Notes under the pieces: generated by a model
What the model was told of the DNA's origin: nothing
What the model saw: the letters and a program-made list of their open reading frames with translations, nothing else
The model's database searches: none
Made by a program: the position numbers and the translations under genes
Shown here: positions 24,201 to 59,933 of the stretch, piece by piece
How the letters are laid out: each line of letters opens with the position of its first letter
How positions within the stretch are numbered: the first letter of the stretch is position 1
Assembly: GCA_048013815.1 (NCBI GenBank)
Contig: CM106585.1
Location: 8,370,001 to 8,434,000, forward strand
DNA: 64,000 nucleotides
Direction: 5' to 3'
DNA from: Setoptus koraiensis
Lineage: Eukaryota > Animalia > Arthropoda

Positions 24201-27200
24201 GCACATCCGAACCTAAGCTGTCCTTCAGTCGAGTCCATCACTCTCAATAGCCAATCCCATGTTGGTTTCAGTTTTTTCTCAATGTTCTCAAGTATTGTTG
24301 TAGAAGCAGCTGGAGAAACTTTGAGCTGATTGATGGGCGAATTTGAGTTCTCCCCACGTTCAGATTCCCTAAGTAAGGGTATGAGATCTGATATTGAACG
24401 AATAATGATTGAGAAAGCTCTGGCCAACCCAACAGCTGTTGCTGCCATAGAGAGTTCATTACTGGTTGTAGGCACGGTAGTTAAATGAGAACCAGGGAAG
24501 TTTGTTCGTCTAGCCAACGAGGCGTCTAGATAGTAAGAGTTGTTGGTATGTATCCCTCCAATCGATGCAATTCTGGCAGCCCCATGAGGCAATGCGTTTA
24601 AAGGCGCCGAGTAGACACCACTGTGCTGGTCACGGTGTCGTAAGGCCCATTGTAAATGCTGAGCTAAGTTCGGTCTTGCGTTATTCTGTTGTTGATTTGG
24701 CATGAATGATTCTTGAGATTGCTGCATGGGCATATTAGAGATTGGCGGTCTTCTATTATCTACAGATAATTCGTCACCTACAAAGGCTAGTTCTTCATTG
24801 TCTTGCTCAGTATCATTGGCCTCACTTTCCTCATCATCTTCCGGATTAGATGAATCTCCAGATTCAACCTCAGAAAAATAGGCTATTGTCCCTGCTCCTA
24901 CCTCGCTACCTGTCGCGGCACCTGCAGTAACACTACGGTGGCCACTGGGGTTATCTGTGTTGCTCTGTAAAGAAGCGTCGTCTGCATTAGAATCACTCTC
25001 CGAGTCACTTTCATCATGACCTTCAGGCCTGTATACGTTGTTACTCTCATCTGCATCTTCAGAGTCTGCAGCATCGTTGATGCTAGAACTATCATAGAGA
25101 AGTCTGTCGGAATGATGCTCGTGTCTCGTAGAATCGTTGTTAGGTGCAGAAGAGTTCGGATTATCGTCATTCAAAGTTGGATTCGAGGGGAGATTTGAGG
25201 AGCTAGGCACTACGACAGGATCCACTATAAATATTTCTTCACTTCCTTGAGTAGCGTCAGCCATCGAATTAACTAATGAAAAAGGTGCGGTTGGTCTCGT
25301 GACACCAAGTCGGACTGGAGCTATAATGGCGTCGGCTATTTCTGCCAATTGCTCGGCAGCAATAGGTAATAGAGCTTGGAATACTCTTCTGCACTTTTGT
25401 AATATTGTTGACGGTTGATTCTTTTTCCATAAGTTGGACGAACCTCCATTGTTGTGCAGACCTACTTGAGCAAGACTAATTGGCAGATTGGATAGACTAG
25501 ACTGATTGGAGTAGTTGACTGGTGAAAGTTCGACACTCAAAACGAATCCAACGCGAGCGACAGACCGAACAAATCGAACAGCCACTTTTCTTGCTTCATT
25601 CGCGTGGGAAATATTGGAGTTGGAAGATTCTCGGATTATGGTGGTCAATAATACGTCCAACATTTCTTGTCCTATTTTGATTAGAATACAATGGGTGAAT
25701 CGATCCAGCAAAGCGGTGCCATCTTGATTCGACAATAAGGCTTGATCTTCAGCAGCAAGAACTGGGTTATAACGAGAAGTCGTCGAACCTCTCGAAGAAC
25801 TAGTGCCTGTATTTATCACGGCTTTAACTGCAGCCCATTCACCCAATAATTTATCAAGGGCTTTTCTGGAGAATCTTGGAGGCTCCAGATCATGATCAGG
25901 CATATTTTGTTCAGTGGAGTCACTGGGTTTTCTTGCTCCGCTGGGATGGCGAGATCGAGATGTTCCATATTGACGTTGCTCAACTATTTGTCGGCCGACA
26001 GTCTGCACTAAGAACAACAATATGTTTTCTCCTCTGCTATTAGTATATCCGACAAGATCTGTGTCGCTAATAAGTCGTCGTAGTAATTGATATCTGGCTG
26101 TTTGTGAACCAGCGACTAAGGCTTTACATTTACATTTTTCCCAACAATCACAGTACGCTGTGGGTGAAGTACGCTTCAATCTGCACTCGTGTCCCTTGTG
26201 ACAAACTCGAGCACATTCTGAGCAGCAACACAGTGTTTTGGTAAGGCCACAAGTTTTACATTCAAATATATCTTGATTGATATGTTGTGCCCCAGTCCAG
26301 GTGAAACTGCATGTGTCGTTGGCGCATAGCATGTACAGCGGATTGTTATCCAAGTTTGTTCCTTTAGGGAAGATCATTGAAAGAAATAGTTTACGTTGAT
26401 TTTCGGGCTCACTATTGGATTTCTCATAAGCGATTCGTTGAGCAACGTTCAGCAATATAATTGCTGCTGAGTATGCTTTGCCTGCGACTGCTGCCATGAA
26501 AGGTGTCATACCATGAGCGTCCCGCTGCACCATCAGATCAGGTAAGTAAGGTTTTAGAGCATGTGATTCTACTAGTATCCATAAGACTGAATGTGCAGCC
26601 TGTTTTTGTTCTGTGGGATCTATAGTGGAGTCATTGTTGGTATTGTTAAGATGATCATTCGCCCAAGTGTTGTTCAAAACTGCATTGGTTGAATCCGAGT
26701 CTGATAGACCAGGCATTGATCTACTATCGTTGTCCGAAGGTGCCAGATTTATAGTGAGATTTTGCTGTTGTGTGGCATGTTTCAATTTTGATCTCTTAAT
26801 GGCCTCGTGCAGAGAATTGGCCTGCTGGGCACTCGTATCCATTGGTTCGAAAGGTTCCTCGTTCGCGTTTCCAGATCGCATTGGAGTAGTAGATTCCGAC
26901 ATTTTGTTTGATGTTGGTACACATGCACTGACAGCGGCATGGAGTATATTTCTATTAGCATCAATACGTTCTCCAGCCACAACTTGCTGCGATGCCGGCT
27001 CTCGTTCTAATGACGCCAGAGTTAATCTGACATATTCCGGATCGCTTCTTAGAATAGCCGGAATTAGGATTTGGCTGTCCATTGCAAGAGCAACTACAAG
27101 AGTAGGATGGACTTTATTGCCATTCGTAGTGTCCTTAACTGGATGGACGGCCATAGAAAGCGCTTGAACGGGTGCCATATCTAATTGAAGAGGCTCCTTG

Positions 27201-29878: not shown

Positions 29879-31021
29879 GATATGAAACTAATGGTGGTGG
29901 CGACGGTGACAATCTTATGTATATTTCACAAATATTTTTCAACAATAATGATAATAATAATATAGTGCCTCCCCCTAGTATCTTTTGTTAGAGAAGGCGT
30001 TTATGTCTTTATTCCCGTTTGACCATTCGGGTGATGAGATGTTTAAGTTACTATCTTGAGCAATATGTTGTTATTTGTTATATTTAATCAACTATTGTAT
30101 AATATATTGAGGACATAGCTAAACTGTTGTAGCCATTTGAATTGGCTTAAACATAGTTATGAATATAATGTAATAATAATAATAATGAGATAATAATGAT
30201 TTTTTTATTAATGCAGTTATTGTAATGCTGCACTACTATCATCTAGGAATATCACGATGAGATTTAGAATGTGACGATTTTACGACGATGTTGTCTTTAT
30301 TCTCAAAAGCATTGCTGTTCACTAAAACGCCATTGACAGAGAAGGCGCATGCGTCTTATGCAAGCGCCATTTTCAAACAAATAAAGGACCCCATATGGGT
30401 GTGTCAGTCAATTGATACTGCACACACTTGCAATCTGTGACTCACAAAAACAAAAACAATAATTGTTTCGTCCAAGAGTCGGTAATCCTAGAAAACTTTT
30501 TTGTTTGCCACTATTTCACTATTTTAATCACAAATCTACTAAACTAATTACTATTTACTAATGTTGATAGCAAGCAGAGTTTAGTTTAAGTAGGCCGGCG
30601 GTGTCATCAGTTCAATAGGCAGTTGTTTATCACAAAGAGGATGCGCATACCAGTTGTTAATCCGCAGCAACACCACATGCACCTGACAAAGACTTACGGG
30701 TTCACGTACCCCTCGTACTGCGTTCTACGTGAAACGGGTATGCGGCTGCGCCGTGATTCAGTGTGAATACTTCAAAATAGAATGGAAAAATTATTTCATG
30801 TCGTTATTCAAAACAGATTTGTACATCTTGGCTGCAATCAATTTATTCTTGCAAGGACACACAAATATGACGAAGCTCAACTCAAACGGCTAAAACTATT
30901 CCAAGTACAATCTCTCACAGGGCTTGTGGCCTAACAACGGCCAGAAACTGTCAGATAGGCGTATCAATTACAATTTTATAACACGAACGGTCTCATTTTT
31001 TGAACTACATAAAAAGTAATC
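29879..31021. promoter_or_regulatory. Probable bidirectional promoter and 5' UTRs between UBR5 (-) and FBXL6 (+)
   Basis: Head-to-head genes 1.1 kb apart. YY1-like GCGCCATTTT at about 30364 and Inr-like TCAGTC at 30404-30409. Motifs are short, so the positional argument carries the call. Confidence 0.4.
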
Positions 31022-32593
31022 ATGCGTGGCAAAAAAGGATCAAGGAAAAGTCCACGTGTCTCCGGGATAGGTAGTAAAAGATCGTTGAGTCCAGATAGCG
31101 ACTCAGGCGATTCCGACTATGGACCGGACCAAGGAGAAATCAAAAAAACTTGCAAACCGAAAACTTCTAAACGATCTACAAAAAAATCGAGAGCTGAAAA
31201 TGACGAAGCCTTATATTTTCTAACGACAAAATCTGTTCCAAAAGATGCAGTCAATTTGGATCAAGATCATGGAGTCAACTTGTGGCTCATCGTTAGAGAG
31301 GTCGAGCCCAACAATCATAGAGATAGACTACCCGCAGAACTATTGCTCAAGATTATCAGACGTAGTATAGAAATCTCCGACAATCCACTTCTGCAACTTG
31401 TAAACTGCAGTCAAGTTAGTGAATACTGGCGACAACTGGTTGTTTACACCTCTGACTTGTGGTCAAGATTGGATCTCACTCATTTACCACAAACTAAAAG
31501 GAACATCGAAACATTGAGACAGCTATTTAGATTGAATCCAAATATACCCAAATGCATCAGAAGGCTAGATTTGGAGGGATGGAATGTTAATCATTTGATG
31601 TTTCCCTTGATAGATTCTATTTTCGAACATCAAAAATTAGAACATTTAGGTCTTAGAGCTGTGACAACTGCTAACAGAACAGTATTTTTCGAAGCGATCT
31701 CTAAGACATCCGCGACGTTGAGATCAATTGTAGTAAATAACTCTAAGCCTCTTCTCCAAACTGGCCAAAGTTGGCTTGTGCAATATTTCACCAATTATGG
31801 AAATAACTTGGAAACATTAGATCTGAATGTCAGTCTTCATTCGATAACCCCAACTCTCTTCAAAATAATTTGTTCAACTTGTTTGAACCTCAAAGTATTA
31901 GACTTATCCACTGGAGTATATATAAACCAAGGTTCATTAGGACTTGATGCATCTCTCTTGGCAAATAACTTACCAAACCTTGAAGTATTGAGGTGTGCCA
32001 CAACTTCCTTCAAGCGAGTGATTAATGCAAACCCAATTCGTGGTCTGACCAAACTGAAGGAATTATCAATTCCAACTTTAGTACCCGACTCGGATAGAGA
32101 TGATGCTTTATTTGCCACTCTCGCGTACGGTTCTGAGTCTCTAGAATATCTTGACATTAGAGGTAGTGTAATTTCAACATATGCTCTAAACGATCTCCCA
32201 AGCGCCAACATTACAGCCTTACATATGGATGATATGTCATCAAATATATACAGAAATTATCCATTAATTATAAAGAAATGGGCAAAAAACTTGGAATGTT
32301 TGAGTTTACTTAGGATCAATAATGGAGAACTAATAGATGAATCTTTGAAAATAATCGCCGAAGAGCAAAAAAATGGTTCGAATATGCGAGCTATCGACTT
32401 ATCTGGTTCTGATGTTACCCTGACTGGCCTTAGACATATTTTAGATTCGTGCACCCACCTGGAGGCTTTGAATTTGATCTCTTGTCGTTGCTTGCCTAGA
32501 GGATTCAAAGGTTCTTATAGTTCCAATGTAAGATCAAACAGGTTAAGTATTACCACACTTAAGTCCAAGATTAGTGAAGAAACTTGGAACTGA
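31022..32593 (+). CDS. FBXL6: F-box/LRR-repeat protein 6-like, 523 aa, intronless
   Basis: Basic/acidic N-terminus; F-box (LPAELLLKIIR...CSQVSEYWRQL...LWSRLDL); AMN1-type LRRs; C-terminal LNLISCRCLPRGFKGSY typical of FBXL6. Confidence 0.82.
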   Translation: MRGKKGSRKSPRVSGIGSKRSLSPDSDSGDSDYGPDQGEIKKTCKPKTSKRSTKKSRAENDEALYFLTTKSVPKDAVNLDQDHGVNLWLIVREVEPNNHRDRLPAELLLKIIRRSIEISDNPLLQLVNCSQVSEYWRQLVVYTSDLWSRLDLTHLPQTKRNIETLRQLFRLNPNIPKCIRRLDLEGWNVNHLMFPLIDSIFEHQKLEHLGLRAVTTANRTVFFEAISKTSATLRSIVVNNSKPLLQTGQSWLVQYFTNYGNNLETLDLNVSLHSITPTLFKIICSTCLNLKVLDLSTGVYINQGSLGLDASLLANNLPNLEVLRCATTSFKRVINANPIRGLTKLKELSIPTLVPDSDRDDALFATLAYGSESLEYLDIRGSVISTYALNDLPSANITALHMDDMSSNIYRNYPLIIKKWAKNLECLSLLRINNGELIDESLKIIAEEQKNGSNMRAIDLSGSDVTLTGLRHILDSCTHLEALNLISCRCLPRGFKGSYSSNVRSNRLSITTLKSKISEETWN

Positions 32594-32966: not shown

Positions 32967-35900
32967 TTATTTATTTTTGGTTCTTGAATTCTTAGTTAAT
33001 TTATCCGATTTACTTGTCACCAGATTTTTCTTTTCATTTCTCTTGCTTTTTCTACGTTCAATTGTGCCATCGACTACGGCGGTGATGTTGTCTGTGTTGT
33101 AGGATTCAGATTTTAATATGTTAGACAATAGTAATGGTTGTTTCGATAGACCAACACTTGGATTTAACTCTAGCTCAGCTAATATAGGAAAATGATCGGA
33201 TGGGAAATTCGGTTGAGGCAAACCCACAACTCCATTCTCTTTTATCCAGTGATCGTCTAATGGCCCGAGTACTCCCTTGACATTTAGTAAACTCTTAGAG
33301 TAGAATATATAGTCAATCATTCCACAGAAACTTGATCTGCTCGGGGGAAAAACAACAACAATACAAACAAGTATCACAAATTAGTATACGACGTTGAGGT
33401 TGTAATAATATTGCTGTCAATCAAGATATCGTGTTAGGGCTACTTACGTGTAATTTGTGTAAGGCATTATATTTGTGTTGTAAGCCGTGTCTAAATTAAA
33501 TGAATGATAGTATTGTTGTTGCTCGTCGTTATCAGAGAGCCGTTTACTCATCGCTCCAGAATTGATTGTCTTAGTTTTCATTGAGAAACAATTTCTGTAA
33601 GCGTAGTTTTTGAAGTCGGCGTGATCGACTGAGATTCTGCCATCAGTGAGAAATTTGAATACCCCTGAATCTGGCAATGAGTTGAAGTCACCGCATAACA
33701 CAAGCGGTATATTAATTATATCTCCGTCACAATCTCTTTTTCCATCTTCGCATGCTTTCTTCGCCATTGATGTCAATTCGTTCATCAACATAATTGTTTG
33801 AATTAGTTTAACATCACAAAACTCTGGATCCCAGTGGATGTGGGCGGTGCAAACTAACAATCTCTTTTTCTCTTTGCACGTTGACAAGTTTTTATGATCA
33901 TCTTTGCTGATTTTTGTTTCGTCGTCTTTAACGCAACCATTCAAATGCTCAACAGAGTTGTGGCTTAGTTTCTTGTAGTTTAAGCTATCTGAGCTAGCTT
34001 CGATGGGACCAAACTTGTTGATTAAAGGAGGCCATTCCATAGAATCGTTAGATGGTGGTGGCAACGAGTTGGATCTATCAGTGAGAAGCCTGAGCGTCAA
34101 AACTGGGTCTTTATCTTTGTCGTGGTGATGGTGTTCCATATCTTGAGGAGGGTCGGTTTCATTCTGATCAATCAACTCAAGAAGGGCTGCAATGCCGATA
34201 TTATCTTTGGTCATGACTCTATTGAGCATGGCGTCGGAACCGTGTGCGTTGGCCATGGCAATCTTGTTAAACTCTATCAAATTTTGTTCAACAAGTTTGA
34301 ATTTGGACGCTTTGTAAAATATTGCGCAACCGTCCACAAGCCTTCTGAATGGCTCTAACATTGTTTTTGCTCTCGATTTAGGCGCGAATATGCCTTCGTA
34401 ACCCTCTAGTCTGAGTTGAGGCAAGAAATAGTCATAGAATTGATTTGTTTCAACCTCTTGCAACGAAATAAGATCCGATCCTGATGATTTGATTTCGTTA
34501 AATATCTTCTGTTTCCTGTACGTCCAATTAAGAGCATAATCTGGACAATAGCTATATTTTTGTTTTGTTGCATAGATGTCTGATAGTATATTGTAGCACA
34601 TAACAGAGAAAGGTGGGTTGTTTTTATGATTAGTGTCACTCGGTTTAGTCATGTTGTTTTGCTCATTCGATTTTAACCAGGGCCTTGGTGGCGGGTCTCT
34701 CCTGGATTGCTCAGCAAATGATTTTGATACACCTGAGGACACCCCTGGTGGTTGATGAGATAGATTAAGATAACAAACAAAATGATGCAATCAACAATAT
34801 TTCAACCATTTTCTCAATATAATCATTGAATGACTGTTTTACTTACCCATTCTCGGTGAGCTAGACATTCCCATATTATAGCTATAGTTGAGTTGATGAC
34901 TATTCTGTTGAAGTTGGCTGTTATGTCGAGAATGTGTCCTAGTAATATTATTATCTAATGTTAAATTTAGGCATGAGTTGGCGGGCAAAGACTTATGTCG
35001 GTGTACGACATTCGAAGCAACATTGACGTTGAAAGAGTTAAGACATTTTAGTTTATGTAGATTCTGTTGCTGGTGGTGCTGCTGCTGTTGTTGTCGGCGA
35101 TGAAGATTCGTATGATAGCAGCATGTCATATGCTGATTTTGATGATGGATATATTGATGTTCAAAGAAGACACTGTCATTAATATTAGCGAGACAACTAT
35201 CATTATAATCCATTATTGTGGTTGTAAGATCACAAGATTTTCTTGTCGTTTGCTGCTGCTCCCGAGGCTGCTGACTAGTGTCAGCGTAGAGTTTGTTGCG
35301 ACTACTTGGTTCCATAATTACGCGAGGTAATTGTATTTTGCTTGTTTCATCTGAAAGTTGTTTGCAACAATCGACAGATGATAGCAAACCAACAGGTCGA
35401 CCTGCTGTCGCAGTTCTCTCTATTAAACTTAAATCATTGAATGAATCACCTAGGGATCCATGCTTGATTATTGTTGCTAAAGATGCTCTAGGGTTGTAAT
35501 GATTTGGCTCTACATCATTGAAACTTTTTCTTGTTAATTGACTCTGGTCAAGATCCTCGAAAGATTTCAATTTGTTTTCATTGTCGTTGGCCACATTTAA
35601 TGTATCAGCGCTGTCAGGTAATATTAACATATAAGAATCTTCTTTTTCTACATGAGTCAATGATTGGCTCGGATTACTATTCTGTTCACAATTCTGTTTG
35701 GAACAATCAAAGCTATCTATATTATTGTTGTTGTTGTTGTTATTCAAGCAATTCCTGTCCTCTGGACTTTGACGCTGATTTTTTATTGATGTTGAATTGA
35801 TTGCTCTATTTTCTAGTTCATCAAAACAACAATGAGTACAACAACAATCAAGCATTGGCGGCGAGGAATAACAAGCAGTAGCCTGTTCAAGTTGCTGCTT

Positions 35901-38591
35901 CAATAGTTTCAATTGTTTTAAATGTAGCCGTTCGCGTTTCGTCGGATTATTTCTCATTCTTTTATGTTTTCGCGGTTTGTCGCGCCGATGGTTTGATGTA
36001 TCTGTGTCTGGATTTGAAGCAAGTTCTGTTTGATGAATGATTTTCGGTTGTTGATTATCTCTATTAGTATCGCCATTAATTGGATCGTTGGTGCTTATAG
36101 GCACAGAAACTGTTCGCATTAATGGTTTAATCTTAGATTTTTGCTGTTGCAATTGTTGTGCAGTTGTTTGCGATATACACTGACTCAATTGATTTGTTTC
36201 ACAACAATCCTTCTGGCCCTCCAAACTTATGCAACATTGTCGTTGACGATTGTTGAAGTTTCTATCGTTGCCGAGAGCTCGCGTTACGACATTACCATCG
36301 ACACTGTAGTTGCTAATGCCGTTTGTTAGTTGTTGATTTTGTAATAATAAATCACTGTTATTTACAAAAATTTTATTGTTGTTGTCGCTGATGCAATCGC
36401 TTATGTTTGCACTTGTAATTTCATCGACATTATTTGCAAAGTCACAACATTGCTGCTGTTGTTTATCGTACTCAACATTATTAGTAATGTTGTCATTGTT
36501 GTTGTTGGCAACTATTTTCAAATTGTTGTTGTTATTGCTGTTGCTTACTAAACTACAAGAATTATTATGACTGCTGTTTGCGTTTGGTATTATTGTTGGC
36601 CAATCTTCATCAGTGGCGTTAGTCGATATTGTTTGACTGTCAATGTCTAACAGTGATACTGTGTCTTGGTAGGATGAATCCTCCTCCGATCTAATACTTA
36701 GACTATCGAATAGCGAAGTTGACGACTTGAAAGACAACTGATCAATGCTTATCGTCACACTACTACAACTATCATGTTGATGATCCTTGTTGTTGCTGTT
36801 AGTAGAATTGGCCAATTCGTAGTTGGCATCATAAATAGAAGATGATGCATTGTTGTTATGTGATATGCTAGATGCGAAACCCGATGAAGATGATGTTGAT
36901 GATATTGACGATGATAACGGCGGATGATGATGGTGATTACTCAACAACGAGGATGGCGAATTGTTGTTATTACTATATGATTGAACAAGAGATGAACTAG
37001 AATTAAGACGAACACGACCCGTTGCCGATGATTTGATCGGTATCGATAACGATCTACTAATCGTTTGTTGACTAGTCAAGTGTTTAGTCGGCCCTGTAGC
37101 TGTCGTTAGCTGTGGGTCACTGTTGGTGTCTAGTGCGAACTGGCCATGATCATATTCATCCTCATGTTGTTGTTGGCCCGATGATGATGTCGACTTTCTC
37201 CGCTCGCCTTCTTGCTTGTTGTTGTTTATTTTATTTTTCGATTGGTGTTTAGTTGCTTGACAATTATTGAACGAGTGAGTTCGACTGCAATCGTTTTTTG
37301 TGGTTGTCGAATCGGGCGCTATCTTGTGGATATCAACAGAGCCTCGGCAAACGTGGTGCTGGTGGTCGGCTGACAACGTTTGGCGAAGCTTGTAATCTGT
37401 GTAATTATGACTATGGATGTTTTCGCAACTATTACCGCTACTTTGTTGCTGTTTGTTGATGCTACTAAATCCAATGCTAATTTTGTTATCATTACTATGA
37501 TAATTATTGTGATGTAGATGATTGACATCAAGTGTTCTTTTCAATTTTTGCTTTTGATGATATTTTCTGTTTTGTTGTTGTTGTTGTTGTTGCTGTTTAT
37601 CTCGGATTCTAGTTTGTTCGTCGTTGTCGCGTTCATCAGGCGATCTAAGCGAAACCAGTTGGTCATAGTTCCCATTTAAGAGTTTGGCGCTTGATTTGAA
37701 AACTTTTGAATTGTCCACTTTGTTCATCGGCAACGATTTTCTATCATCGTGCCGGTCACTATTTGGGGCATTCTCATCATCGTCTAATCTAATGAGTAAA
37801 TGTGATGGAGATGACCAATCAACAGGTGATTGAGGCACTGATGTGTTATCTACATGAGATGATGCAATTGAATTCTTGGCGCTCTGCTGCTGGTGTTTGG
37901 GCTGTTTGGGTCTCATATGGTAATATTCATCTCGCTCGCACTGCTGCTGTGATAACTGTGCGGACTTGGTTGTCTGATATCTGCTGAATTGAGATCTCTC
38001 ATTCAATCTTGCCGTTGCAAATCTATCGCCATTTGTATCATCTGTTATGGCATTTTGATTAGGATTAATAATGATATCAGTGCGGCCTTTAGTATTCTGG
38101 CCTCGTCGAGTTTTTCGTTTCCTTTTAGTCGTATCATGTATCATATTGGCGGCTTTTGTTTGCGAGACAATCTGTTGCTGTTCACTTGAAACTACTTCTG
38201 CGTCTTCTTTGGGCACTGGCTTGTCTTCAGGATGGGCTTTGTCATCGATGTTGCAACATGATGATGCTGTTGCCGATGTTGTTTGTGTTTGCATTTTATT
38301 TTGCCAACAATCTGGCAAAATTGACTTGCTTATTCCGGTTTGTTGCTTTTCATCAAAAAAGAAACGATGATGGTTTTTATTGTTGCTGTCGGTGTCTCGG
38401 AAAACTGTAACAAATGTTTTTTGGCGCTCGTTTGTGCAAGCAACTGAATGGTCGCTAGTGGTTTTAGGAAGAAGTTGTTGGGTAGTTTGTTGTTGTTTTA
38501 CATTTAATGAAACATTTGCCGTTAACGTTGGTAGCTTCGGTTGTAGTCTTGATGTTTCGTTGACATCTTTGTCTCTAGTCTTTTGTTCCAT
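32967..38591 (-). CDS. Divergent CCR4/CNOT6-type EEP deadenylase paralogue, about 1,803 aa: ~1,250-aa low-complexity first exon with eroded LRR, plus intact EEP nuclease domain
   Basis: Exons 38591-34847 (donor ATG G|GTAAGT), 34744-33448 (acceptor CCAG|; an in-frame alternative AG lies 12 nt downstream) and 33336-32967 total 5,412 nt, in frame. EEP motifs: MCYNIL, SLQEVET, KSRAKTM, VDGCAIFY, NRVMTKDNIG, CTAHIHWDPEFCDVK, CGDFNSLPDSGV, IDYIFYS, PSDHFP. Confidence 0.85.
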
Positions 38592-40107
38592 CGTTTTCTT
38601 TTGATTGTTTTTCTTGTTCTTGTGTTCTTAAAATATGATTCGATTGTTTCTTGTTCCTTTAATAGATTTGTTTTGTTGTGATTAATCTAGACTGATCAAT
38701 ATTGTTATTATTGTAATATATTATATCTGCTTCTATGCCGGCAAACACACACAGCTAATAGAAAGCTTGTAGAACTAGGAATCAATCTTCTTCTTTTAAA
38801 TACACATACCACCACGCATGATATCATATGGCGACAGTGTGGTGATGCTGCTCACTTTATTATTATTATTATTATGGTTTCCTGTTTCATTTTCATCTAT
38901 TTGTCGTTTAGCGTTTAGTGTGTCTCGCTTAGCCACTTGCCTGTATTATCAGACTATTATTACATGGATAAGTTGATATTTAGAATATAACTGGTGGTAG
39001 TTGGGTATTCTCTGTCTGGCTCGTTGTCTTTGTTTGTGAACGCGTGACTAGCGAAAGAAATATATTAATTAATGTTACTAATAGTCGACTGGTTTTTATG
39101 ACTAACACCAGTTGTGAGAGTGAGTCAGTGTTTACACTAGCTGTTCTCGAGAGGCATGTTTTTCATAAAGTATCGGAAGATGATGATTTTGTGATCACGA
39201 TGATGTACCACGAGTTGTTGTTGTTGTCGCCTGTTGATGGGTTTAAGTTGATATGGGAAGATAACGAATGATGATTGTTGACGCTAGTTAAAAGAGATGG
39301 CAATCACGATGTTTATATTAATAGCAGTAATAATAATATTATTATACGATTATTATCAGAGATTCTGATCATCCGCGTTCATCTAACACTCTACTATCGG
39401 AATGGCTTGTCTTCCAGACAACCCGGCCGGCAAGCCAGGCTTTCCAGGAACGGCATCGGCGGCAGGTAGTTGATTTCATCTTCACATCACTTGTAGTTCG
39501 TCTTCATCTTACAATTCGAATCACACCTCAGCCGTCTTAGAGAGTCTAATTGCGTGTGAGACAAACGAGCCAGACGTGCTGGTTAACATTGAACACCACC
39601 GGCATGAGCGACAACAATTATGGCAGTCACACACACACACCACAATGATAATAATGCAGTAGTTAACTTAATTCGACCACATTAACCAGATTGTAGTGGT
39701 AGTAAATGATGCCAGATATAGAGGAATCTATAACATAGTAAATATCCATTATGTGCGAGAGGTACAAAACAATCTATTGATTGACAGCATTGCACCAATC
39801 AATCGTCCAATTAGACAGCTATTACTGCGCCTGTTGTTGCATACTCGTTCGTTGGCTATTGCTTGTCGCATTGGCTATTGATTCAAGGAAGCCAATTTTG
39901 AAAGAAGGAAGCCAAGGCTAAAATTTGTTGTCTTGCCAAGCTCATAATAGAACGCACACACACACACTGCAGAGCACTGTAACTAAACTTATTGCCGGTT
40001 TAATAGTGCTGCAATCGGTGCAATTGTCATGGCACCACCACAAAAAATGTGTATAAGAGGCAGGTATTGTTGTGTTGTTTAGCTCACCTGAATTGTCTGT
40101 TATGGAC

Positions 40108-40150: not shown

Positions 40151-43100
40151 AATTATAACTTGCAGTTATCTGTTTTTCGTTGCTGGTGTGCGCTGGCGTA
40201 GACTATGGTGCTCAATAGAAAATGAGAGAGGACCTTCGCTCATTGCTCGAATTGCCTTGTCTAAAATGATAGTCCCTTGTTGACAATGTAAAAAGCACGT
40301 TTTCTTTCTTTCCTGACTCACTCAAGTAAAAGTAGCTGGCTTCCAACGTTTGCTAGTGACGCTGACTGGTTACGCTCAATAGTTGTGATTAATAAAACTG
40401 AAAGCTTTCCAAAGTACCTGCACTCTGAAACGCCATTATGGGCCTGGACAACGTTACTCTCAATCTATTTATAAATATATCTCTTGTTACTTCCCTGCTA
40501 ATACACTTTTTGTATATAAATACATATATTATAGAGCAGTAGCTACACAACAGCAATACCGCGCGATCGATATTGATCGTCAGATCGTCGTAACACTCGA
40601 TCCGACGAAACTCTAATAACTCTGTATGAATATGCTTTTATTGCTCACTTTACAATGTATACAATGAACTTAACTATCATTTACAGCACGACAATGCTCG
40701 TGGTGGTGTTAAATGTGAGCCATTTGGCTAATTAGTTTATTGCGCTTGATTATATTGCTCGATTAAATAATAATTCAAATTCGTCTCAATAGAAGATATA
40801 GGGATAATTTCACAACTATCACCACTACTCCAACTACTGTATCACTATCAATTTACTATTGGTATTGCGCAATGCGCAAAAACACTCCGTCCGCGGTTAA
40901 TAAAAGATGAAAACTACTTCACACAAACTACAGTACTGTACTAGCAGCAAGTTGAGTGAACTCTCACTAGTTGATAGTATACGATGTCCAATGCGGCATT
41001 GCATTGGAAAATATTGCTGCTGCCAGCTCATGTCTAACCATTAGTGAGAGTAGTCACTGTTGTTGTTGTTATATAACATCCATGGTTGCTTCTCATGCAT
41101 AGTTATGTGTATTGCTGCAGCTTAAAATGCTAAAGTGCAAGTGTAAGGTCATTGCCTCAGCTCTTTTCACCAACAACCCATTGCAACAGCAACAGCAGCA
41201 ACAACAACAACAACAACAACAACTCATCAGCCACCTTGATCTAAAGCAATGTGCAAACTTTGACTTGGCCAGATACCCTCTGTGTTTGTGTTAGCTTTGT
41301 GTGATGATGACCTCCAAAAGAACGCTCTCTTGCCCTCTTGTTGGCTTCGCTTGCTTGCTCGATTACTCACTTGCTCTGCGCAACATCTCACAATCCTTTG
41401 CTGTCTAAAATTCTTCTTCTTCTTCTAATAATAACAAGTCTTCCATGAGAATGTGTGAGAAAACAAAAAACAAGTCAAAACCACATGACACTATGTGTAT
41501 TATTGATGACGATAAAGACGAGATTGGGCTAGACGCATAGACGGCGTGCAACTCATTACTATTATTATTATTCAAATATGATGCCAAGCCTGCTTGTTTA
41601 TCGTTACATAACAGAGTGGCATGTGCCGCAACTTTGAGCAGTCAAGACGGGAACTGTCGGAGAAAACATCAACAACAAGCAATGTTAACAATAACAACAT
41701 CACCATACACTTCTGCGCAAGGTGCATTAGGTTACGTAGACAAGATGGCTAATCCTTTTATTACGTTATTGCATTAAGTTTGTTGACACTGCCATCGAAC
41801 CTAAGACACTGGTCACAAGACTGACTAGCCATTTTCATGTGTCATGTGATCTCAAGTATCATGCGCTCGTCAATAATAGTGTGTTACTATGTTTGTTGTT
41901 TATCTCTTCTAGTGAATCTTTCATTCTACGCCAATTTTGCTAGCTTGGGAAATATTTGTAAGCATCCCTTTCTCTTCAACAAATCTCAAAATAGATAGAT
42001 GAATAAATTACACGAGCTCTTGACTACTCACGCGCACTCAATAAATGGCTCTCTAAATCACTGCTAAGAATCAATTAAGGACAAGATTGACAGAGAAGTC
42101 AATTTTTGTCGCAAAATCTCAATAATATCGATTGAATATTGCCACTTTCGCCTCTCTAGAAATCAATGGGCAAACGATGCCTCATCCTTCCAGTCCTGTG
42201 ATACATGTAGTAAGAGTCACGATTGGGGTACGTGAACTCGTTTTGTTATGTGCATCATTGTTGTAACATAATGGAAACATAACATGACCGAATATTGAAA
42301 TAGTCTGGCGTGCACAAACGAACAGGTTGTGACACCAAGGTCAGCGACCTTTTGTCTATCCACTCAACTACCTGGTGTCTCATCTCATGAGTATAGTGTT
42401 TGACGATTATCTTCACGTTCAAATAGTGGAATATTTTCGAACGTTTCAGGGCATGAACCATGTCTGATGATGGGTGAATCATACATATTGTGTGATTACA
42501 TTGCTGATGAAACTAATCACGCGGATACTCAATGATTTCCGCCACATATTAAAACAAAAAACAAAAAGAATAGCAACCGTTTGATTGTGTCCTATCAATC
42601 ATGATACTTCATGATGAGATATGATCAGCGCGCTGAAAGTATTATAATAGATGTGAATAGATTATAGTTATAGCAGTAATACTAGCCATTGTTTTACAGG
42701 ATGATTATTTGTTTAACTGTCGATGACACATTAACTAGATCACATGGTATTTCTTTCTTTCTCTCTTTGTAGATAGGTTTATCATCGCCACTATGTGTGA
42801 GTGTTGTCATCAACAAACAATGAGTGGATTGGTCCACAGTTTACTTTTAAATTTTGTCTGTTATTTGTTCGCCACAGCTTCATCGACACAAATATTCATC
42901 AACATCTAATGATTATACAATAATATATAATGGAGTTGTTTTTTTTTGTTTCTTCGATCAATACACAATGATGTAATAATTATTACGAGATATTGCTATA
43001 ATGCTCATATCGGTGAGTTCATCAAATTTTGCTTTTACATCTTGTTTTTTCTTTATCAACACTTTAATTGTCGGAGTTTACTGATGTGAAAATAAATGTT

Positions 43101-54907: not shown

Positions 54908-57244
54908 ATGGCTAGACCTGGACATCGTGATAGGGACAAATATGAAGCGCCCAATCCGCGCCGTGTACATACTATTATGTCTGCAGAGGATTTAGCCAGT
55001 GGCAGAAAACCGGCCCCCTGGAGAGGTCTAGAGATTACTGGTGGCGTAAGGACATTATCTCCCCAATTATGGTCGATGATACATCTAACATCATTATATT
55101 TGAATGATAATAATCTACAACGAATACCTCCCGATATCGGTAGACTGACTAAGCTCAGGTATTTAGATATATCATCAAACAAATTACGTGGGTTGCCCAA
55201 TCAAATAGGTGATCTAATACTCTTAAAAGAGTTATTATTGAACAACAATAGCTTGCGCACCCTACCCTATGAGATGGGAAAATTATTTCAACTACAAAAA
55301 TTGGGTCTCAAAGGTAACGCATTAAGTTCGGAATATTTACAATTGTACAATGACCACGGAGGTACACAGAAGTTAATCACATACCTATTGGATTGTCTAG
55401 CTGTACAACAACCAGCGCCCCGCCCATCACAGCGCCCATGGATCTTGATGGATCAGCCTGTTGACAGATCTAAACCATCATGCATGTTTACGGTGATGTG
55501 TTATAATGTTTTATGTGATAAATATGCTACAAGACAACTCTATGGATACTGTCCAAGTTGGGCTCTTAGCTGGGAGTATAGGAGACATTCTATTATGGAA
55601 GAACTTAAAGCTAATTCGGCCGACATCATAGCCCTTCAAGAAGTAGAAACCGAACAATATCACGACTATTTCTTGAGAGAATTACAAGCTGAAGGTTATG
55701 ATGGTATATTTTCACCAAAATCGCGAGCTAAAACAATGACGGAATCAGAAAGGAAATACGTTGATGGTTGTGCCATTTTCTACAGAACTAGTAAATTCTC
55801 ATTAATAGCCGAGCATCTGATTGAATTCAATCAATTGGCTATGGCTAATGCTGAAGGTTCAGATGATATGTTGAACAGAGTAATGACCAAAGATAATATT
55901 GCTTTAGCAGCATTACTACAGATCAAAGAAGGAGCATTCGATTCTTTTCAAACAAGTGGCACTGGAAGTAATGTTGTTGGCGGAGGCCTGAATTCTACAT
56001 CGGGTATCCCTTCGGCCAGCAACCAGAGCACGCCAGGTATGTCCGGAACTACTCAGCAACAACCACATCAGCAGAGGTTATTAGTCTGTACAGCACATAT
56101 TTATTGGGATCCTGAATTCTGTGATGTCAAGATTATACAAACTATAATGTTGACGCAAGAGCTGCAAGCCATCGCTGATGCCGCTGCTCTTGATCTTATT
56201 AACAGTAGCACCAATTCAAATAAACAGTTATTAAACAATGGATGCGCAACCAATAGCGACGGAGATAGTAATAATGGGAACTCGACTGATAGCATTGATG
56301 GTGAAATAATGGCCTCCAAAAGCGATAGTATGAAGATTGATCTATACCAACAGAAGCCGAACGGTCAATTGGGTGCCGAGATGATACCTTTGATATTGTG
56401 CGGAGATTTTAATTCATTGCCTGAATCTAGCGTTGTTGAATTCTTAAACAACGGATCTATATCAGATGACCATAAAGATTTTAAAAAATTAGCTTACAAA
56501 GACTGTTTACGCAAGATATGTAACTCGAGATTATCAGCGTTGGCAAACTCACAGCATTCACAACACCAACAAAGTCATCAGTATTCGACGTCGCAGTCGT
56601 CAAAATTATCGTCACTATCAACGCAAGCATCATCATCGCTTGATAATGACAAATCATCCGGAAGTATCGACTCACTATCGAATACTCCCAATGGTAATGG
56701 TGGGAACAACCCGCAGAAGAATAGCAATGTCTATTCCAATAGTAGTATGTCCACCTTAACCAATTCAGCTATAAACAACTCAGAGTCCAACAATTACACC
56801 CACCCTTTTCCGATTGCAACGGCTTATACTGGCGAAGGAGCCATGCCGTTTACCAACTACACGTATGTTAATTTCTAAAGTTTACTAACTCTAACGATCG
56901 AGCTCTATAGCATAAAGTATGTTTCTAATTAATCCTAATTCTTCCTTTATCTACATAGGTTTGACTTCAAAGGTGTTATTGATTACATTTTTTACTCAAG
57001 AAACCTAATGTCAGTGCTGGGAGTGTCCGGTCTGGACAAGAGCTGGCTTACAGAGAACAAAATACCCGGTTTGCCGCATCCATACTTCCCCTCGGACCAT
57101 TTTCCATTATATGTGGAGCTAGAAATATTGCCAACCCCTCGTAGCACTACCATAAGCAACAGATATAAGCTACAACAACCAAATCAACATCAACACAAAA
57201 ATGACTTTCTTCAAATAAATCCAATGAGAAAACCCTTTTTTTGA
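54908..57244 (+). CDS. CNOT6: CCR4-NOT complex subunit 6 (CCR4/Twin), LRR + EEP deadenylase, about 746 aa, 2 exons
   Basis: DKYEAPNPRRVHTIMS N-terminus; LRRs (LTSLYLNDNNLQRIP, LRYLDISSNKLRGLP, LKELLLNNNSLRTLP, LQKLGLKGN); EEP motifs to PSDHFP. Exons 54908-56862 and 56959-57244 (96-bp phase-2 intron GTATGT...ATAG). Confidence 0.96.
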
Positions 57245-59695: not shown

Positions 59696-59933
59696 ACGAC
59701 TATTTCTTCAGAAGATTACAAGCTGAGGTTGGATCTAAATCGCGAGCTAAAACAATGACGAAATCGAAAAGGAAATGTGTAGATGGTTGTGCCATTGTCT
59801 ACAGAACTAGTAAATTCCCTTAAGCCGAGCTGATCTGATTGAATTTTATCAATTGGCCATCACTAATGCCAAAAGTTCAGCTAGCTAAACCAAGCTAAAA
59901 CCAGTGCCAATTGAATTGATATCGGAGATTAAT
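59696..59933 (+). pseudogene. Decayed fragment of the canonical CCR4/CNOT6 gene
   Basis: 59696-59880 matches 55662-55862 (ACGACTATTTCTT..ATTACAAGCTGA..AAATCGCGAGCTAAAACAATGACG..GATGGTTGTGCCATT.TCTACAGAACTAGTAAATTC..) with indels and frameshifts. A possible further trace at 59904-59933 matches 56373-56413. Confidence 0.88.

What the first reader, a model, noticed from the sequence alone, without database searches (positions are those of the whole stretch)
32967..38591. Second CCR4/CNOT6 deadenylase with an intact active site but a giant disordered N-terminus and no intact CAF1-binding LRR
Seen: the EEP domain has CNOT6-specific motifs (KSRAKTM, VDGCAIFY, MANAHGSDAMLNRVMTKDNI, HWDPEFCDVK) and all catalytic positions (YN, LQE, GDFN, IDY, SDH). 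It is spliced to a 3,745-bp stop-free exon of Q/N/S/H-rich sequence that includes a basic KRKRKTRR stretch and has no intact LRR. Established: in animals and fungi the CCR4 LRR docks the enzyme on CAF1/POP2 within CCR4-NOT, and the LRR-less relatives (Nocturnin, Angel, PDE12) are separate ancient subfamilies. Inference: this is a lineage-specific CNOT6-derived deadenylase uncoupled from CAF1. It may be targeted instead by a condensate-prone disordered region, as a stand-alone or granule-localised enzyme. It is the best candidate here for an undescribed system.
Basis: partly seen in the sequence, partly recalled or inferred. Interest (0 to 1): 0.82.

Follow-up and report, generated by a model that had tools for sequence, protein, structure and literature searches.

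The report
LRR-less CCR4 deadenylase paralogue in a mite
A gall-mite genome carries, 16 kb from its normal CCR4 poly(A)-removing enzyme, a second conserved copy that keeps the catalytic domain but replaces the CAF1-docking repeat with a 1,249-residue orphan floppy region; this resembles repeat-less CCR4 isoforms predicted in many arthropods, so it is a variant of something known, not a new system.

Summary
A three-exon minus-strand gene (38591-34847, 34744-33448, 33336-32967) encodes 1,803 aa. It joins a 1,249-aa orphan, mostly disordered N-terminus in frame to a CCR4/CNOT6-type EEP nuclease with every catalytic motif. No LRR is detectable by any test tried.

A sister species has the orthologue in the same synteny, with the same splice sites and phase and a 103-nt intron against 102 nt here. 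dN/dS is 0.12-0.19, so the gene is real and under purifying selection. No RNA data could be obtained.

A canonical LRR-bearing CCR4 lies at 54908-57238 and shares the paralogue's second intron.

The interpretation needs revision in three ways.
- The duplication is probably old, on the eriophyoid stem, not recent.
- LRR-less CCR4 proteoforms, made from an alternative first exon joined by a phase-1 intron at the same LRR/EEP boundary, are predicted in flies, bees/ants, crustaceans and a scorpion. The paralogue looks like that isoform turned into its own gene.
- Other notes of this scan report giant disordered stretches in further genes of this genome, and the canonical CCR4 here is also inflated.

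CAF1 independence and condensate targeting remain untested inferences. Verdict: new variant of a known kind, moderate interest.

The parts
34847..38591 (-). Exon 1: ATG at 38591 (A at -3, G at +4), 1,248 codons plus 1 base. It encodes an orphan S/N/Q/T-rich, mostly disordered N-terminus.
   Evidence: ORF and shuffle test, coding potential. No Pfam hit. No homologue in 1.84e9 representative proteins or in the word-index search. Atlas gave nothing. Order-promoting residue fraction is 0.10-0.30, against 0.35-0.47 in the EEP core. The last 81 aligned codons are conserved in the sister species, dN/dS 0.19.
38103..38126 (-). Basic cluster KRKRKTRR (residues 156-163), NLS-like.
   Evidence: Regex on the translation. 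Function inferred only.
35868..35939 (-). The only confidently predicted helix of the exon-1 tail (about residues 885-908, KRERLHLKQLKLLKQQLEQATAC), followed by the Cys cluster CCCTHCC.
   Evidence: AlphaFold2 single-sequence model of residues 859-1248: mean pLDDT 37, one helix with pLDDT 70-86, no solenoid. Cys cluster.
34745..34846 (-). Intron 1: 102 nt, GTAAGT...CAG, phase 1 (split Gly codon G|GG), with an in-frame stop directly after the donor.
   Evidence: In the sister species the donor, acceptor and phase are the same but the length is 103 nt, so only splicing preserves the frame in both.
33448..34744 (-). Exon 2: linker PPPRPW plus most of the CCR4-type EEP nuclease domain, up to PYTNYT.
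   Evidence: Pfam PF03372 6.8e-13. PDB CNOT6 4e-95. AF2 pTM 0.69 and Foldseek CNOT6L 3e-26. dN/dS 0.13.
33864..34130 (-). Paralogue-specific insertion of about 90 aa in an EEP surface loop, predicted disordered.
   Evidence: Alignment. pLDDT < 50 for residues 205-280 of exon 2.
34011..34091 (-). Invariant 27-aa motif RLLTDRSNSLPPPSNDSMEWPPLINKF inside the insertion; a candidate linear binding motif.
   Evidence: 27 consecutive invariant residues. 6 synonymous and 0 non-synonymous differences from the sister species.
33337..33447 (-). Intron 2: 111 nt, phase 2, inside the Thr codon of NYT. The canonical CCR4 has an intron at the same position and phase.
   Evidence: AC|GTAAGT...CAG|A here, AC|GTATGT...TAG|G in the canonical copy.
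32967..33336 (-). Exon 3: end of the EEP domain (IDYIFYS, PSDHFP), then a 65-aa Lys/Ser-rich basic tail and the stop codon.
   Evidence: dN/dS 0.12 against the sister species.
54908..57238 (+). Canonical CCR4 (twin/CNOT6-like), two exons (54908-56862, 56959-57238), 744 aa. It has four LRR cores and low-complexity insertions in EEP loops. It is the presumed parent or sister copy.
   Evidence: tblastn. LRR profile 1e-73. Sequence. 150 of 161 near-invariant columns kept. 97% identical to the sister species' copy.

Best explanation
This is a real, selectively maintained gene of an eriophyoid (gall/rust) mite. It encodes a CCR4-type Mg2+-dependent poly(A) 3'-exonuclease that has no LRR and so cannot dock on CAF1/POP2 in the known way.

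Its build is a long alternative N-terminal exon, then a phase-1 intron just upstream of the PPxRPW linker, then the EEP domain. That matches the LRR-less CCR4 isoforms which other arthropods make from an internal alternative first exon.

The most likely history is as follows. CCR4 duplicated on the eriophyoid stem. One copy kept the LRR form and lost the boundary intron during genome streamlining. The other copy kept the LRR-less form. Its N-terminal exon then diverged beyond recognition and swelled to 1,249 residues, as other notes of this scan report for further proteins of this genome.

The enzyme would work as a CAF1-independent deadenylase, recruited by short motifs. Candidates are the invariant proline/tryptophan motif in the EEP insertion, the basic clusters, a helix in the N-terminus, and the basic C-tail.

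Shown: the gene structure, family, intact active site, lack of an LRR, conservation and purifying selection, and the existence and layout of LRR-less isoforms elsewhere. Inferred: activity, independence from CAF1, the recruitment mode, and the isoform-partition history.
For: Gene and junctions:
- establish the ORF, the splice sites and the coding potential.
- The sister-species orthologue has the same synteny (F-box, UBR5).
- It has the same splice sites and phase, with an intron of 103 against 102 nt.
- dN/dS is 0.13, 0.12 and 0.19 for the three coding parts compared.
- Three independent samples of the species carry only substitutions, with no frameshift or stop.

Family and active site:
- Sequence match to CNOT6, model and fold match to CNOT6L, placement inside arthropod CCR4.
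- 140 of 161 near-invariant CCR4 EEP columns are kept, including all catalytic motifs; all 21 changes are also present in the sister species' copy (which has two further changes), so they are old and fixed.

No LRR.

Role of the LRR: the LRR is the only specific CCR4-CAF1 contact in the human crystal structure (PMC8216464, read; also PMC7105381).

LRR-less isoforms elsewhere:
- Paired isoforms diverge just before (T)xxxPPxRPW in Drosophila, Hymenoptera, crabs and the scorpion Centruroides.
- In the scorpion locus the alternative first exon lies between the LRR exons and the linker exon, with a phase-1 split codon G|TT. The paralogue's split codon is G|GG, also phase 1.

Old duplication:
- AU p 0.044 against a sister relationship to the genome's own canonical copy.
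- AU p 0.355 for a clade with all eriophyoid CCR4, so not rejected.
- Diagnostic columns: 6 ancestral, 3 derived, 4 other.
- The shared NYT intron shows a DNA-level duplication, not retroposition.

Genome context:
- Extreme intron loss in eriophyoids is described in PMC7738191 (title and abstract).
- Motif selection.
- The canonical copy is also inflated, and the scan's other notes report giant disordered stretches elsewhere in this genome.
Against: - No transcript evidence: the only runs found were genomic contigs. Expression and the exon 1-exon 2 junction therefore rest on comparative evidence alone.
- Exon 1 shows no significant similarity to the conserved arachnid alternative exon. The best profile domain scores 5.8 bits (E 0.3), and motif tests gave p 0.03-0.8 with the matches not colinear.
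- The paralogue's intron lies 22 codons upstream of the W of RPW, against 10-12 in other arthropods. Intron identity is therefore plausible but not shown.
- Apart from the sister species, no other orthologue appeared among the best 120 hits of the EEP search, and about 30 other eriophyoid assemblies yielded canonical copies only. None lies within 10 kb of the canonical gene in the two eriophyoid species checked. An old duplication would then require many losses, or a failure of detection.
- The paralogue's stem branch is very long (1.24 changes per site), so its placement in the tree is unreliable.
Confidence: 0.55

Rival explanations
1. Young chimeric gene. A partial local duplication copied only the linker and EEP part of the already intron-poor eriophyoid CCR4. 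It fused, through a newly created intron, to an unrelated or de novo low-complexity ORF. A burst of fast evolution followed, then purifying selection. This is essentially the first reader's 'lineage-specific' origin.
For: - The paralogue lies 16 kb from the canonical gene.
- A further EEP fragment lies at 59698-59879, so the locus does duplicate.
- Homology to CCR4 begins within about 10 codons of the start of exon 2.
- Exon 1 is an orphan.
- The paralogue was found only in this species and one sister species.
- Three eriophyoid-derived states and the shared change C>L in GCPHP are present.
Against: - AU test p 0.044 against a sister relationship to the genome's own canonical copy.
- 6 of 13 diagnostic columns are in exactly the ancestral state, which is unlikely to arise by reversal.
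- The breakpoint would have to coincide by chance with the position and phase of the widespread arthropod boundary intron.
Confidence: 0.28
2. In-place decay. A full duplicate with an LRR lost the repeat by sequence drift, so 'ghost LRRs' survive in the last 130 codons of exon 1 (window 34900-35290). The rest of exon 1 arose by repeat expansion.
For: The exon-1 tail is conserved between the two species: NLHKL(K/R)CLNSFN(V/I)N(V/I)ASN, dN/dS 0.19. It is somewhat Leu/Asn-rich.
Against: - The CCR4-LRR profile lists no match in the exon-1 reading frame at E <= 100.
- The LRR-core regex has 0 hits (shuffle mean 0.2), against 4 in the canonical copy.
- hhalign probability is 0.1%.
- AlphaFold predicts no solenoid.
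- This history needs an intron gain exactly at the domain boundary in a lineage known for losing introns.
Confidence: 0.07
3. Wrong gene model. The 1,250-codon ORF and the EEP exons are two separate genes, or the EEP is translated alone from an internal ATG. Candidates are MTKPSD in this species and MSSGMSK in the sister species. That would give a bare nuclease of about 500 aa.
For: There is no RNA evidence. The sister species has ATG codons at the start of exon 2, where this species has GTG and GTA.
Against: - The donor G|GTAAGT, the acceptor and phase 1 are all conserved, with intron lengths of 102 and 103 nt.
- The ORF ends exactly at the donor in both species.
- This species has no ATG at the sister species' site, and the 102-nt gap leaves no room for a promoter.
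- The exon-1 tail is under purifying selection right up to the donor.
Confidence: 0.08

Closest known systems
CCR4 / CNOT6 / CNOT6L / Drosophila twin (catalytic subunit of CCR4-NOT)
   Same: - The EEP domain is of this type by sequence (E 4e-95), by fold (3e-26) and by tree.
- All catalytic and poly(A)-contact motifs checked are retained.
- One intron is shared with the genome's own canonical CCR4, 16 kb away.
   Different: - No LRR, which is the only known CAF1-docking element.
- A 1,249-aa orphan disordered N-terminus.
- A 90-aa insertion with a conserved motif in an EEP loop.
- A basic C-terminal tail.
- It diverges about five to six times faster than the canonical copy between the two species (amino-acid differences 16% against 3%; dN 0.086 against 0.015).
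LRR-less predicted isoforms of arthropod CCR4. Examples: Centruroides vittatus isoform X2 (P0068); Drosophila bipectinata X3, eugracilis X2 and ananassae X2 (P0022, P0028, P0086); Atta and Bombus (P0004, P0005); Petrolisthes (P0063); Pollicipes (P0110); Logan transcript-like contig (P0071).
   Same: - An alternative, LRR-free and often low-complexity (Q/H-rich in Drosophila) N-terminal exon.
- It is joined by a phase-1 intron a few codons upstream of PPxRPW to the same EEP exons.
   Different: - Those are isoforms of the single canonical gene, with N-termini of 15-345 aa. Here the form is a separate, diverged gene with a 1,249-aa N-terminus.
- The junction is 22 codons before the W, against 10-12.
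- No detectable similarity to the conserved arachnid alternative exon.
- I found no experimental paper on these isoforms. The Drosophila CCR4-NOT review PMC4033318 does not mention them.
Plant CCR4a/b (zf-MYND-like domain in place of the LRR)
   Same: A bona fide CCR4 orthologue class that lacks the LRR (PMC7105381).
   Different: - Plants use an N-terminal MYND-like zinc finger to bind CAF1.
- No MYND or any other Pfam domain is found here.
- The Cys clusters (CCCTHCC and others) do not fit a MYND pattern.
Yeast Ccr4
   Same: A long N-terminal extension precedes the conserved part. PMC8216464 mentions a long, partly structured extension; its Q/N-richness is from my memory.
   Different: Yeast keeps the LRR between the extension and the nuclease domain.
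Nocturnin, Angel/ANGEL2, PDE12/3635
   Same: LRR-less EEP enzymes of the wider CCR4 superfamily.
   Different: Clearly more distant: sequence E 1e-19 to 1e-22 against 1e-95, and fold E 1e-12 to 1e-13 against 1e-26. The paralogue is not a member of these families.

Membership tests
CCR4/CNOT6 deadenylase family | EEP nuclease domain closest to CCR4, not to Nocturnin, Angel or PDE12 | tested here: met
   By sequence (phmmer against PDB): CNOT6 4e-95, CNOT6L 5.5e-93, yeast Ccr4 1e-46, against ANGEL2 3e-22, PDE12 8e-22, Nocturnin 4e-19. By fold (Foldseek): CNOT6L 3e-26, against PDE12 9e-14 and NOCT/ANGEL2 2e-12. Placed inside arthropod CCR4 with 98/92 support.
CCR4/CNOT6 deadenylase family | Catalytic residues (CNOT6L N195, E240, D410, N412, D489, H529) and poly(A)-contact residues (P365, F484) | tested here: met
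   All are conserved in the alignments. 140 of 161 near-invariant columns are kept. Residue numbers are from memory and consistent with the chain offset derived.
CCR4/CNOT6 deadenylase family | N-terminal leucine-rich repeat domain | tested here: not met
   The LRR profile scores the canonical copy 1e-73 and lists no match in the paralogue's exon-1 reading frame at E <= 100. Regex 0 hits against 4, and hhalign 0.1%. Pfam finds none. The AF2 model shows no solenoid.
CCR4/CNOT6 deadenylase family | Binds CAF1/POP2 and so joins CCR4-NOT | not testable with these tools
   Needs co-IP, two-hybrid or multimer modelling with this genome's CAF1, which is not in the window.
CCR4/CNOT6 deadenylase family | Poly(A)-specific 3'-exonuclease activity | not testable with these tools
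   Inferred from the intact active site. The isolated human CNOT6L nuclease domain was crystallised with poly(A) DNA (3ngo).
LRR-less alternative-first-exon CCR4 proteoform of arthropods | LRR-free N-terminal exon joined by a phase-1 intron just upstream of the PPxRPW linker | tested here: met
   Window: G|GG, phase 1, 22 codons before the W. Scorpion: G|TT, phase 1, 11 codons before the W, with the alternative exon lying between the LRR exons and the linker exon. Isoform pairs in flies, Hymenoptera and crabs.
LRR-less alternative-first-exon CCR4 proteoform of arthropods | Sequence homology of the N-terminal exon to the conserved arachnid alternative exon (motifs VQKYIGSCLI, SRLAIHAQGAPLI, LPRxIKPRKRR, SIVTLxPYxPLCYR) | tested here: inconclusive
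   Best profile domain 5.8 bits, E 0.3. Block tests gave p 0.08, 0.62, 0.03 and 0.82, and the matches are not colinear.
Plant-type CCR4 (zf-MYND-like) | N-terminal MYND-like zinc finger | tested here: not met
   No Pfam hit in exon 1 at E < 0.1.
Nocturnin / Angel / PDE12 | EEP domain closest to that subfamily | tested here: not met
   as above.

The most novel reading that the evidence does not exclude
An ancient but unstudied LRR-less CCR4 proteoform, made in most arthropods from an internal alternative first exon, has been resolved into a separate gene in an eriophyoid mite by duplication and isoform partitioning. It is now a CAF1-independent deadenylase, recruited through its own linear motifs within a hugely expanded disordered N-terminus. 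This would give a natural 'separation-of-function' allele for asking what LRR-less CCR4 does in animals.
Probability: 0.35. Interest if true: 0.6.

Novelty: new variant of a known kind. Interest (0 to 1): 0.45.

Why it matters
In animals and fungi CCR4 is thought to act only when tethered to CAF1 through its LRR. A conserved, catalytically intact CCR4 gene with no LRR implies that LRR-free CCR4 has a selectable function. So do the matching LRR-less isoforms predicted across arthropods.

This mite offers that form as a stand-alone gene, which can be knocked down or expressed without touching canonical CCR4-NOT. It is also a tidy example of possible isoform partitioning after duplication, in a genome that otherwise sheds introns.

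It is not a new enzymatic system. The giant disordered region is probably part of a genome-wide trend, not a specific adaptation.

Tried and rejected
1. RNA evidence. Transcription and splicing remain untested.

2. Homologues of exon 1. The word-index search was saturated by low-complexity words and found nothing. phmmer of residues 1-1200 against 1.84e9 representatives gave 0 hits at E <= 0.001. The ESM Atlas gave only sub-0.8 scores to unrelated disordered proteins. Pfam found nothing.

3. More orthologues of the paralogue. A metagenome scan with the two-species alignment found nothing. There is no second EEP copy within 10 kb of the canonical gene in two other eriophyoids. The sister-species contig ends 363 nt upstream of exon 2, so only 83 codons of its exon 1 could be compared.

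4. 'Ghost LRR' in 34900-35290: rejected.

5. Homology of exon 1 to the arachnid alternative exon. Suggestive fragments exist (DKPRKHKR; YSSPPMLDCCCTHC against YPHPPSPRCRCPHC; LPRVI), but none is significant and they are not colinear.

6. Tree placement. It is unresolved because of the paralogue's 1.24-per-site stem, so AU tests and diagnostic columns were used instead.

7. Two scripting slips (splice coordinates, hmmsearch options) were corrected.

Full report
**What is there**

The minus strand between 38591 and 32967 carries three open pieces. They join through canonical GT-AG sites into one 5,412-nt reading frame of 1,803 codons.
- Exon 1 (38591-34847) starts at an ATG with A at -3 and G at +4. 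It runs 1,248 codons plus one base.
- Intron 1 is 102 nt, phase 1, with the split codon G|GG and a stop codon directly after the donor.
- Exon 2 (34744-33448) encodes the PPPRPW linker and most of an EEP nuclease domain.
- Intron 2 is 111 nt, phase 2.
- Exon 3 (33336-32967) completes the domain and adds a 65-residue basic tail.

The long exon is not a chance open frame. Its 1,248 stop-free codons compare with at most 171 in 300 shuffles, and the other five frames hold 65-152 stops. A codon-usage score trained on neighbouring genes is positive in frame 0 and negative in frames 1 and 2 in every 150-codon window.

**Family of the nuclease**

- By sequence, exon 2 matches human CNOT6 (E 4e-95), CNOT6L (5.5e-93) and yeast Ccr4 (1e-46). 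ANGEL2 (3e-22), PDE12 (8e-22) and Nocturnin (4e-19) are far weaker.
- An AlphaFold2 model built with a 60-sequence alignment has pTM 0.69 and a confident core. It matches CNOT6L structures at 3e-26, against 9e-14 for PDE12 and 2e-12 for Nocturnin and ANGEL2.
- The chain-to-residue offset maps the paralogue's CYN, LQE, AHIHWDP and GDFN onto CNOT6L N195, E240, H360/P365 and D410/N412. IDY and SDH in exon 3 correspond to D489 and H529, and the F of SSFCG corresponds to F484. These residue numbers are from memory and agree with the alignment.
- Of 161 EEP columns that are at least 97% identical in 92 reference CCR4 proteins, the paralogue keeps 140 and the genome's canonical copy keeps 150. All 21 of the paralogue's changes also occur in the sister species' copy, which has two further changes, so they are old and fixed.

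**No LRR**

- A profile built from the N-terminal regions of 74 CCR4 proteins was run with all filters off over the six-frame translation of the whole window. It finds the canonical gene at E 1e-73 and does not list the paralogue's exon-1 reading frame at E <= 100. The only pieces from 34.8-38.6 kb are short matches in other frames, the best at E 2.1.
- An LRR-core pattern occurs four times in the canonical protein and never in exon 1. hhalign of the LRR alignment against the last 200 residues of exon 1 gives 0.1% probability.
- Pfam finds no domain in exon 1 at E < 0.1.
- A single-sequence AlphaFold model of its last 390 residues has mean pLDDT 37 and one helix only. This is weak evidence taken alone.
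- The 'ghost LRR' idea from another note of this scan (s1-343061) is therefore not supported.

**The N-terminus**

- Composition is S 13%, N 11%, Q 9%. Order-promoting residues make up 10-30% per 40-residue window, against 35-47% in the nuclease core.
- It contains a KRKRKTRR cluster, a second basic cluster followed by a predicted helix and a CCCTHCC cluster, and short Q, N and H runs.
- No homologue was found in 1.84 billion representative proteins, in the word-index search (which was saturated by low-complexity words) or in the ESM Atlas.

**Is it a functional gene?**

- The best hit of the nuclease exon (82% identity by BLASTP; 84% in the pairwise alignments) comes from a Logan assembly of another sample. 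There the gene lies beside the same F-box and UBR5 genes as in the window.
- That contig ends 363 nt upstream of exon 2, but it holds the last 83 codons of exon 1. The donor, the acceptor and phase 1 are identical, while the intron is 103 nt and not 102. Only splicing keeps the frame in both species.
- Nei-Gojobori estimates between the two species:

| Region | dN/dS | Other values |
|---|---|---|
| Paralogue exon 2 | 0.13 | dS 0.66 |
| Paralogue exon 3 | 0.12 | |
| Paralogue exon-1 tail | 0.19 | |
| Neighbouring F-box gene | 0.08 | |
| Canonical CCR4 | 0.10 | 97% identical, dS 0.15 |

  The canonical copy of the sister species comes from the same sample.
- The paralogue is thus under purifying selection, though its protein diverges about five to six times faster than the canonical one (amino-acid differences 16% against 3%; dN 0.086 against 0.015).
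- Three independent genomic samples of the window's species differ from the window by one synonymous and three conservative non-synonymous substitutions, with no frameshift.
- No RNA evidence could be obtained. The runs returned are genomic assemblies whose contigs run through both introns.

**Paralogue-specific features of the nuclease**

A loop between two core strands carries an insertion of about 90 residues that is predicted disordered. Inside it, 27 consecutive residues (RLLTDRSNSLPPPSNDSMEWPPLINKF) are invariant between the two species. Those codons carry six synonymous and no non-synonymous differences. This is the signature of a linear binding motif.

**Context and origin**

- The organism is an eriophyoid mite. 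The canonical CCR4 in the window (54908-56862 and 56959-57238, 744 aa, four LRR cores) is 69% identical to that of Fragariocoptes setiger. It falls in a 100/100 clade with that protein and about 30 unnamed assemblies.
- The canonical gene has no intron between the LRR and the EEP. It does share the paralogue's second intron, at the same position and phase inside the Thr codon of NYT. The duplication was therefore at the DNA level.
- A 180-nt EEP fragment at 59698-59879, closer to the canonical copy, shows that the locus has duplicated more than once.
- In the tree the two paralogue sequences sit on a 1.24-per-site stem, unresolved among arthropod CCR4.
- An AU test does not reject a clade of the paralogue with all eriophyoid CCR4 (p 0.355). 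It disfavours a sister relationship to the genome's own canonical copy (log-likelihood 22.5 lower, p 0.044).
- At 13 columns that distinguish eriophyoid canonical CCR4 from other arthropods, the paralogue has the ancestral state at 6, the eriophyoid state at 3 and another residue at 4.
- Together these results point to a duplication part-way along the eriophyoid stem, not a recent event. Against that, no other eriophyoid yielded an orthologue. Those searches were shallow.

**The key comparison**

- Among the CCR4 hits are a dozen proteins with at least 60 residues before the linker and no LRR.
- Isoform pairs from the same or closely related species are identical from just before the linker and unrelated upstream of it:

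| Group | LRR form | LRR-less form |
|---|---|---|
| Drosophila | ...LDNLSF\|TVNPPPQRPW | ...NPCPI\|TVNPPPQRPW |
| Hymenoptera | ...NLQV\|TANHPPQRPW | ...KRTL\|TANHPPQRPW |
| Crabs | ...NLAV\|TTPQPPQRPW | ...TTQV\|TTPQPPQRPW |

  The scorpion Centruroides vittatus has isoforms X1 and X2 of the same kind.
- The Drosophila LRR-less N-termini are Q/H-rich and low in complexity.
- In the scorpion genome the LRR exons lie at 1001-24391 of locus L006. A single alternative first exon lies at 40422-40919, and the linker exon starts near 60845. Both upstream exons end in G|GT and the linker exon supplies TT, which makes a phase-1 split codon.
- The mite paralogue has the same build: an LRR-free first exon, a phase-1 intron (G|GG), then linker and EEP. 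Its junction lies 22 codons before the W, not 10-12.
- The scorpion alternative exon shares conserved blocks with an unnamed arthropod contig, P0071. Exon 1 of the mite shows no significant match to those blocks.

**Reading**

The most economical explanation is that the paralogue is the LRR-less CCR4 proteoform of arthropods turned into its own gene after a duplication on the eriophyoid stem. The canonical copy then lost the boundary intron during the intron loss described for eriophyoids (PMC7738191, title and abstract seen). The paralogue's first exon diverged and expanded.

Expansion by disordered sequence seems general in this genome. The canonical CCR4 is itself about 190 residues longer than usual because of low-complexity loops. 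Other notes of this scan describe a Ras GTPase, PDE4 and other genes with giant disordered stretches (I did not check these).

[quoted passage not shown] The paralogue should therefore not join CCR4-NOT in the known way. Whether it acts alone, is recruited by its motifs, or reaches the complex by another route (as plants do with a MYND-like finger, PMC7105381) cannot be decided here. The condensate idea is compatible with the composition, but nothing tested here speaks for it specifically.

**Rivals**

- A young chimeric gene from a partial duplication fused to an unrelated ORF remains possible (about 0.28). It fits the orphan exon and the narrow known distribution, but not the AU test or the ancestral character states.
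- In-place LRR decay is disfavoured (about 0.07).
- A wrong gene model (two genes, or a bare nuclease translated from an internal ATG) is unlikely given the conserved splice sites and phase (about 0.08), but it needs cDNA to exclude.

**Verdict**

The gene is a new variant of a known kind: a bona fide CCR4 nuclease in an LRR-less architecture that already exists, as predicted and apparently unstudied isoforms, across arthropods. Here it is fixed as a separate, fast-evolving but constrained gene with an unusually large disordered N-terminus.

Interest is moderate. It offers a clean handle on the function of LRR-free CCR4, but it is not an undescribed system, and expression is unproven.

Noticed in passing
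window 59698-59879 (+): A short EEP fragment matching canonical CCR4 residues 253-318. It is 69% identical to the canonical copy over 45 aa and 51% identical to the paralogue. It lies about 2.5 kb downstream of the canonical gene and is probably a relic of a further local CCR4 duplication.
   Followed up: partly
L006 40422-40919 (Centruroides vittatus); P0068 residues 1-166; P0071 residues 1-345: The alternative LRR-less first exon of scorpion CCR4 shares conserved blocks with an unnamed arthropod contig (Logan SRR7472198). The blocks are MGPxP..VQKYIGSCLI, SRLAIHAQGAPLI, LPRxIKPRKRR and SIVTLxPYxPLCYR. There is no Pfam family for them. This suggests a conserved but uncharacterised LRR-less CCR4 proteoform in arachnids.
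   Followed up: partly
window 54908-57238 (+) versus L002 248-2233: Between the two mite species the canonical CCR4 has dS 0.15, while the paralogue and the F-box gene have dS about 0.65. This fourfold difference in synonymous divergence between genes 20 kb apart is unexplained. Possible causes are selection on synonymous sites, introgression or conversion.
   Followed up: no
window 37556-38700: In runs X1 and X2, assembler depth rises from about 22 to 83-133 over the 5' end of exon 1 and the upstream region. In run X3 it stays flat at about 121. The contigs also break at short repeats (35713-35750, 37561-37604). This could be a copy-number difference or repeat collapse in one strain.
   Followed up: no
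window 54908-56862 (+): The canonical eriophyoid CCR4 carries several S/N/Q/T-rich insertions in EEP surface loops. Its length is 744 aa, against about 550 in other arthropods. Other eriophyoids share these insertions in variable form.
   Followed up: partly
P0002 (Dendroctonus ponderosae YQE_04930, 736 aa): This database protein consists of two nearly identical LRR-less CCR4 EEP units in tandem, the second with an internal deletion. It is likely an assembly or annotation artefact, or a tandem duplication, in the beetle.
   Followed up: no
window 21296-32593; L001 2464-11650: The UBR5/EDD (HECT) and F-box/LRR genes flank the paralogue in the same order in both mite species. The gene order around the canonical CCR4 (Band_7, M13 peptidase, GCM) differs from that in two other eriophyoids (L003, L004).
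   Followed up: partly
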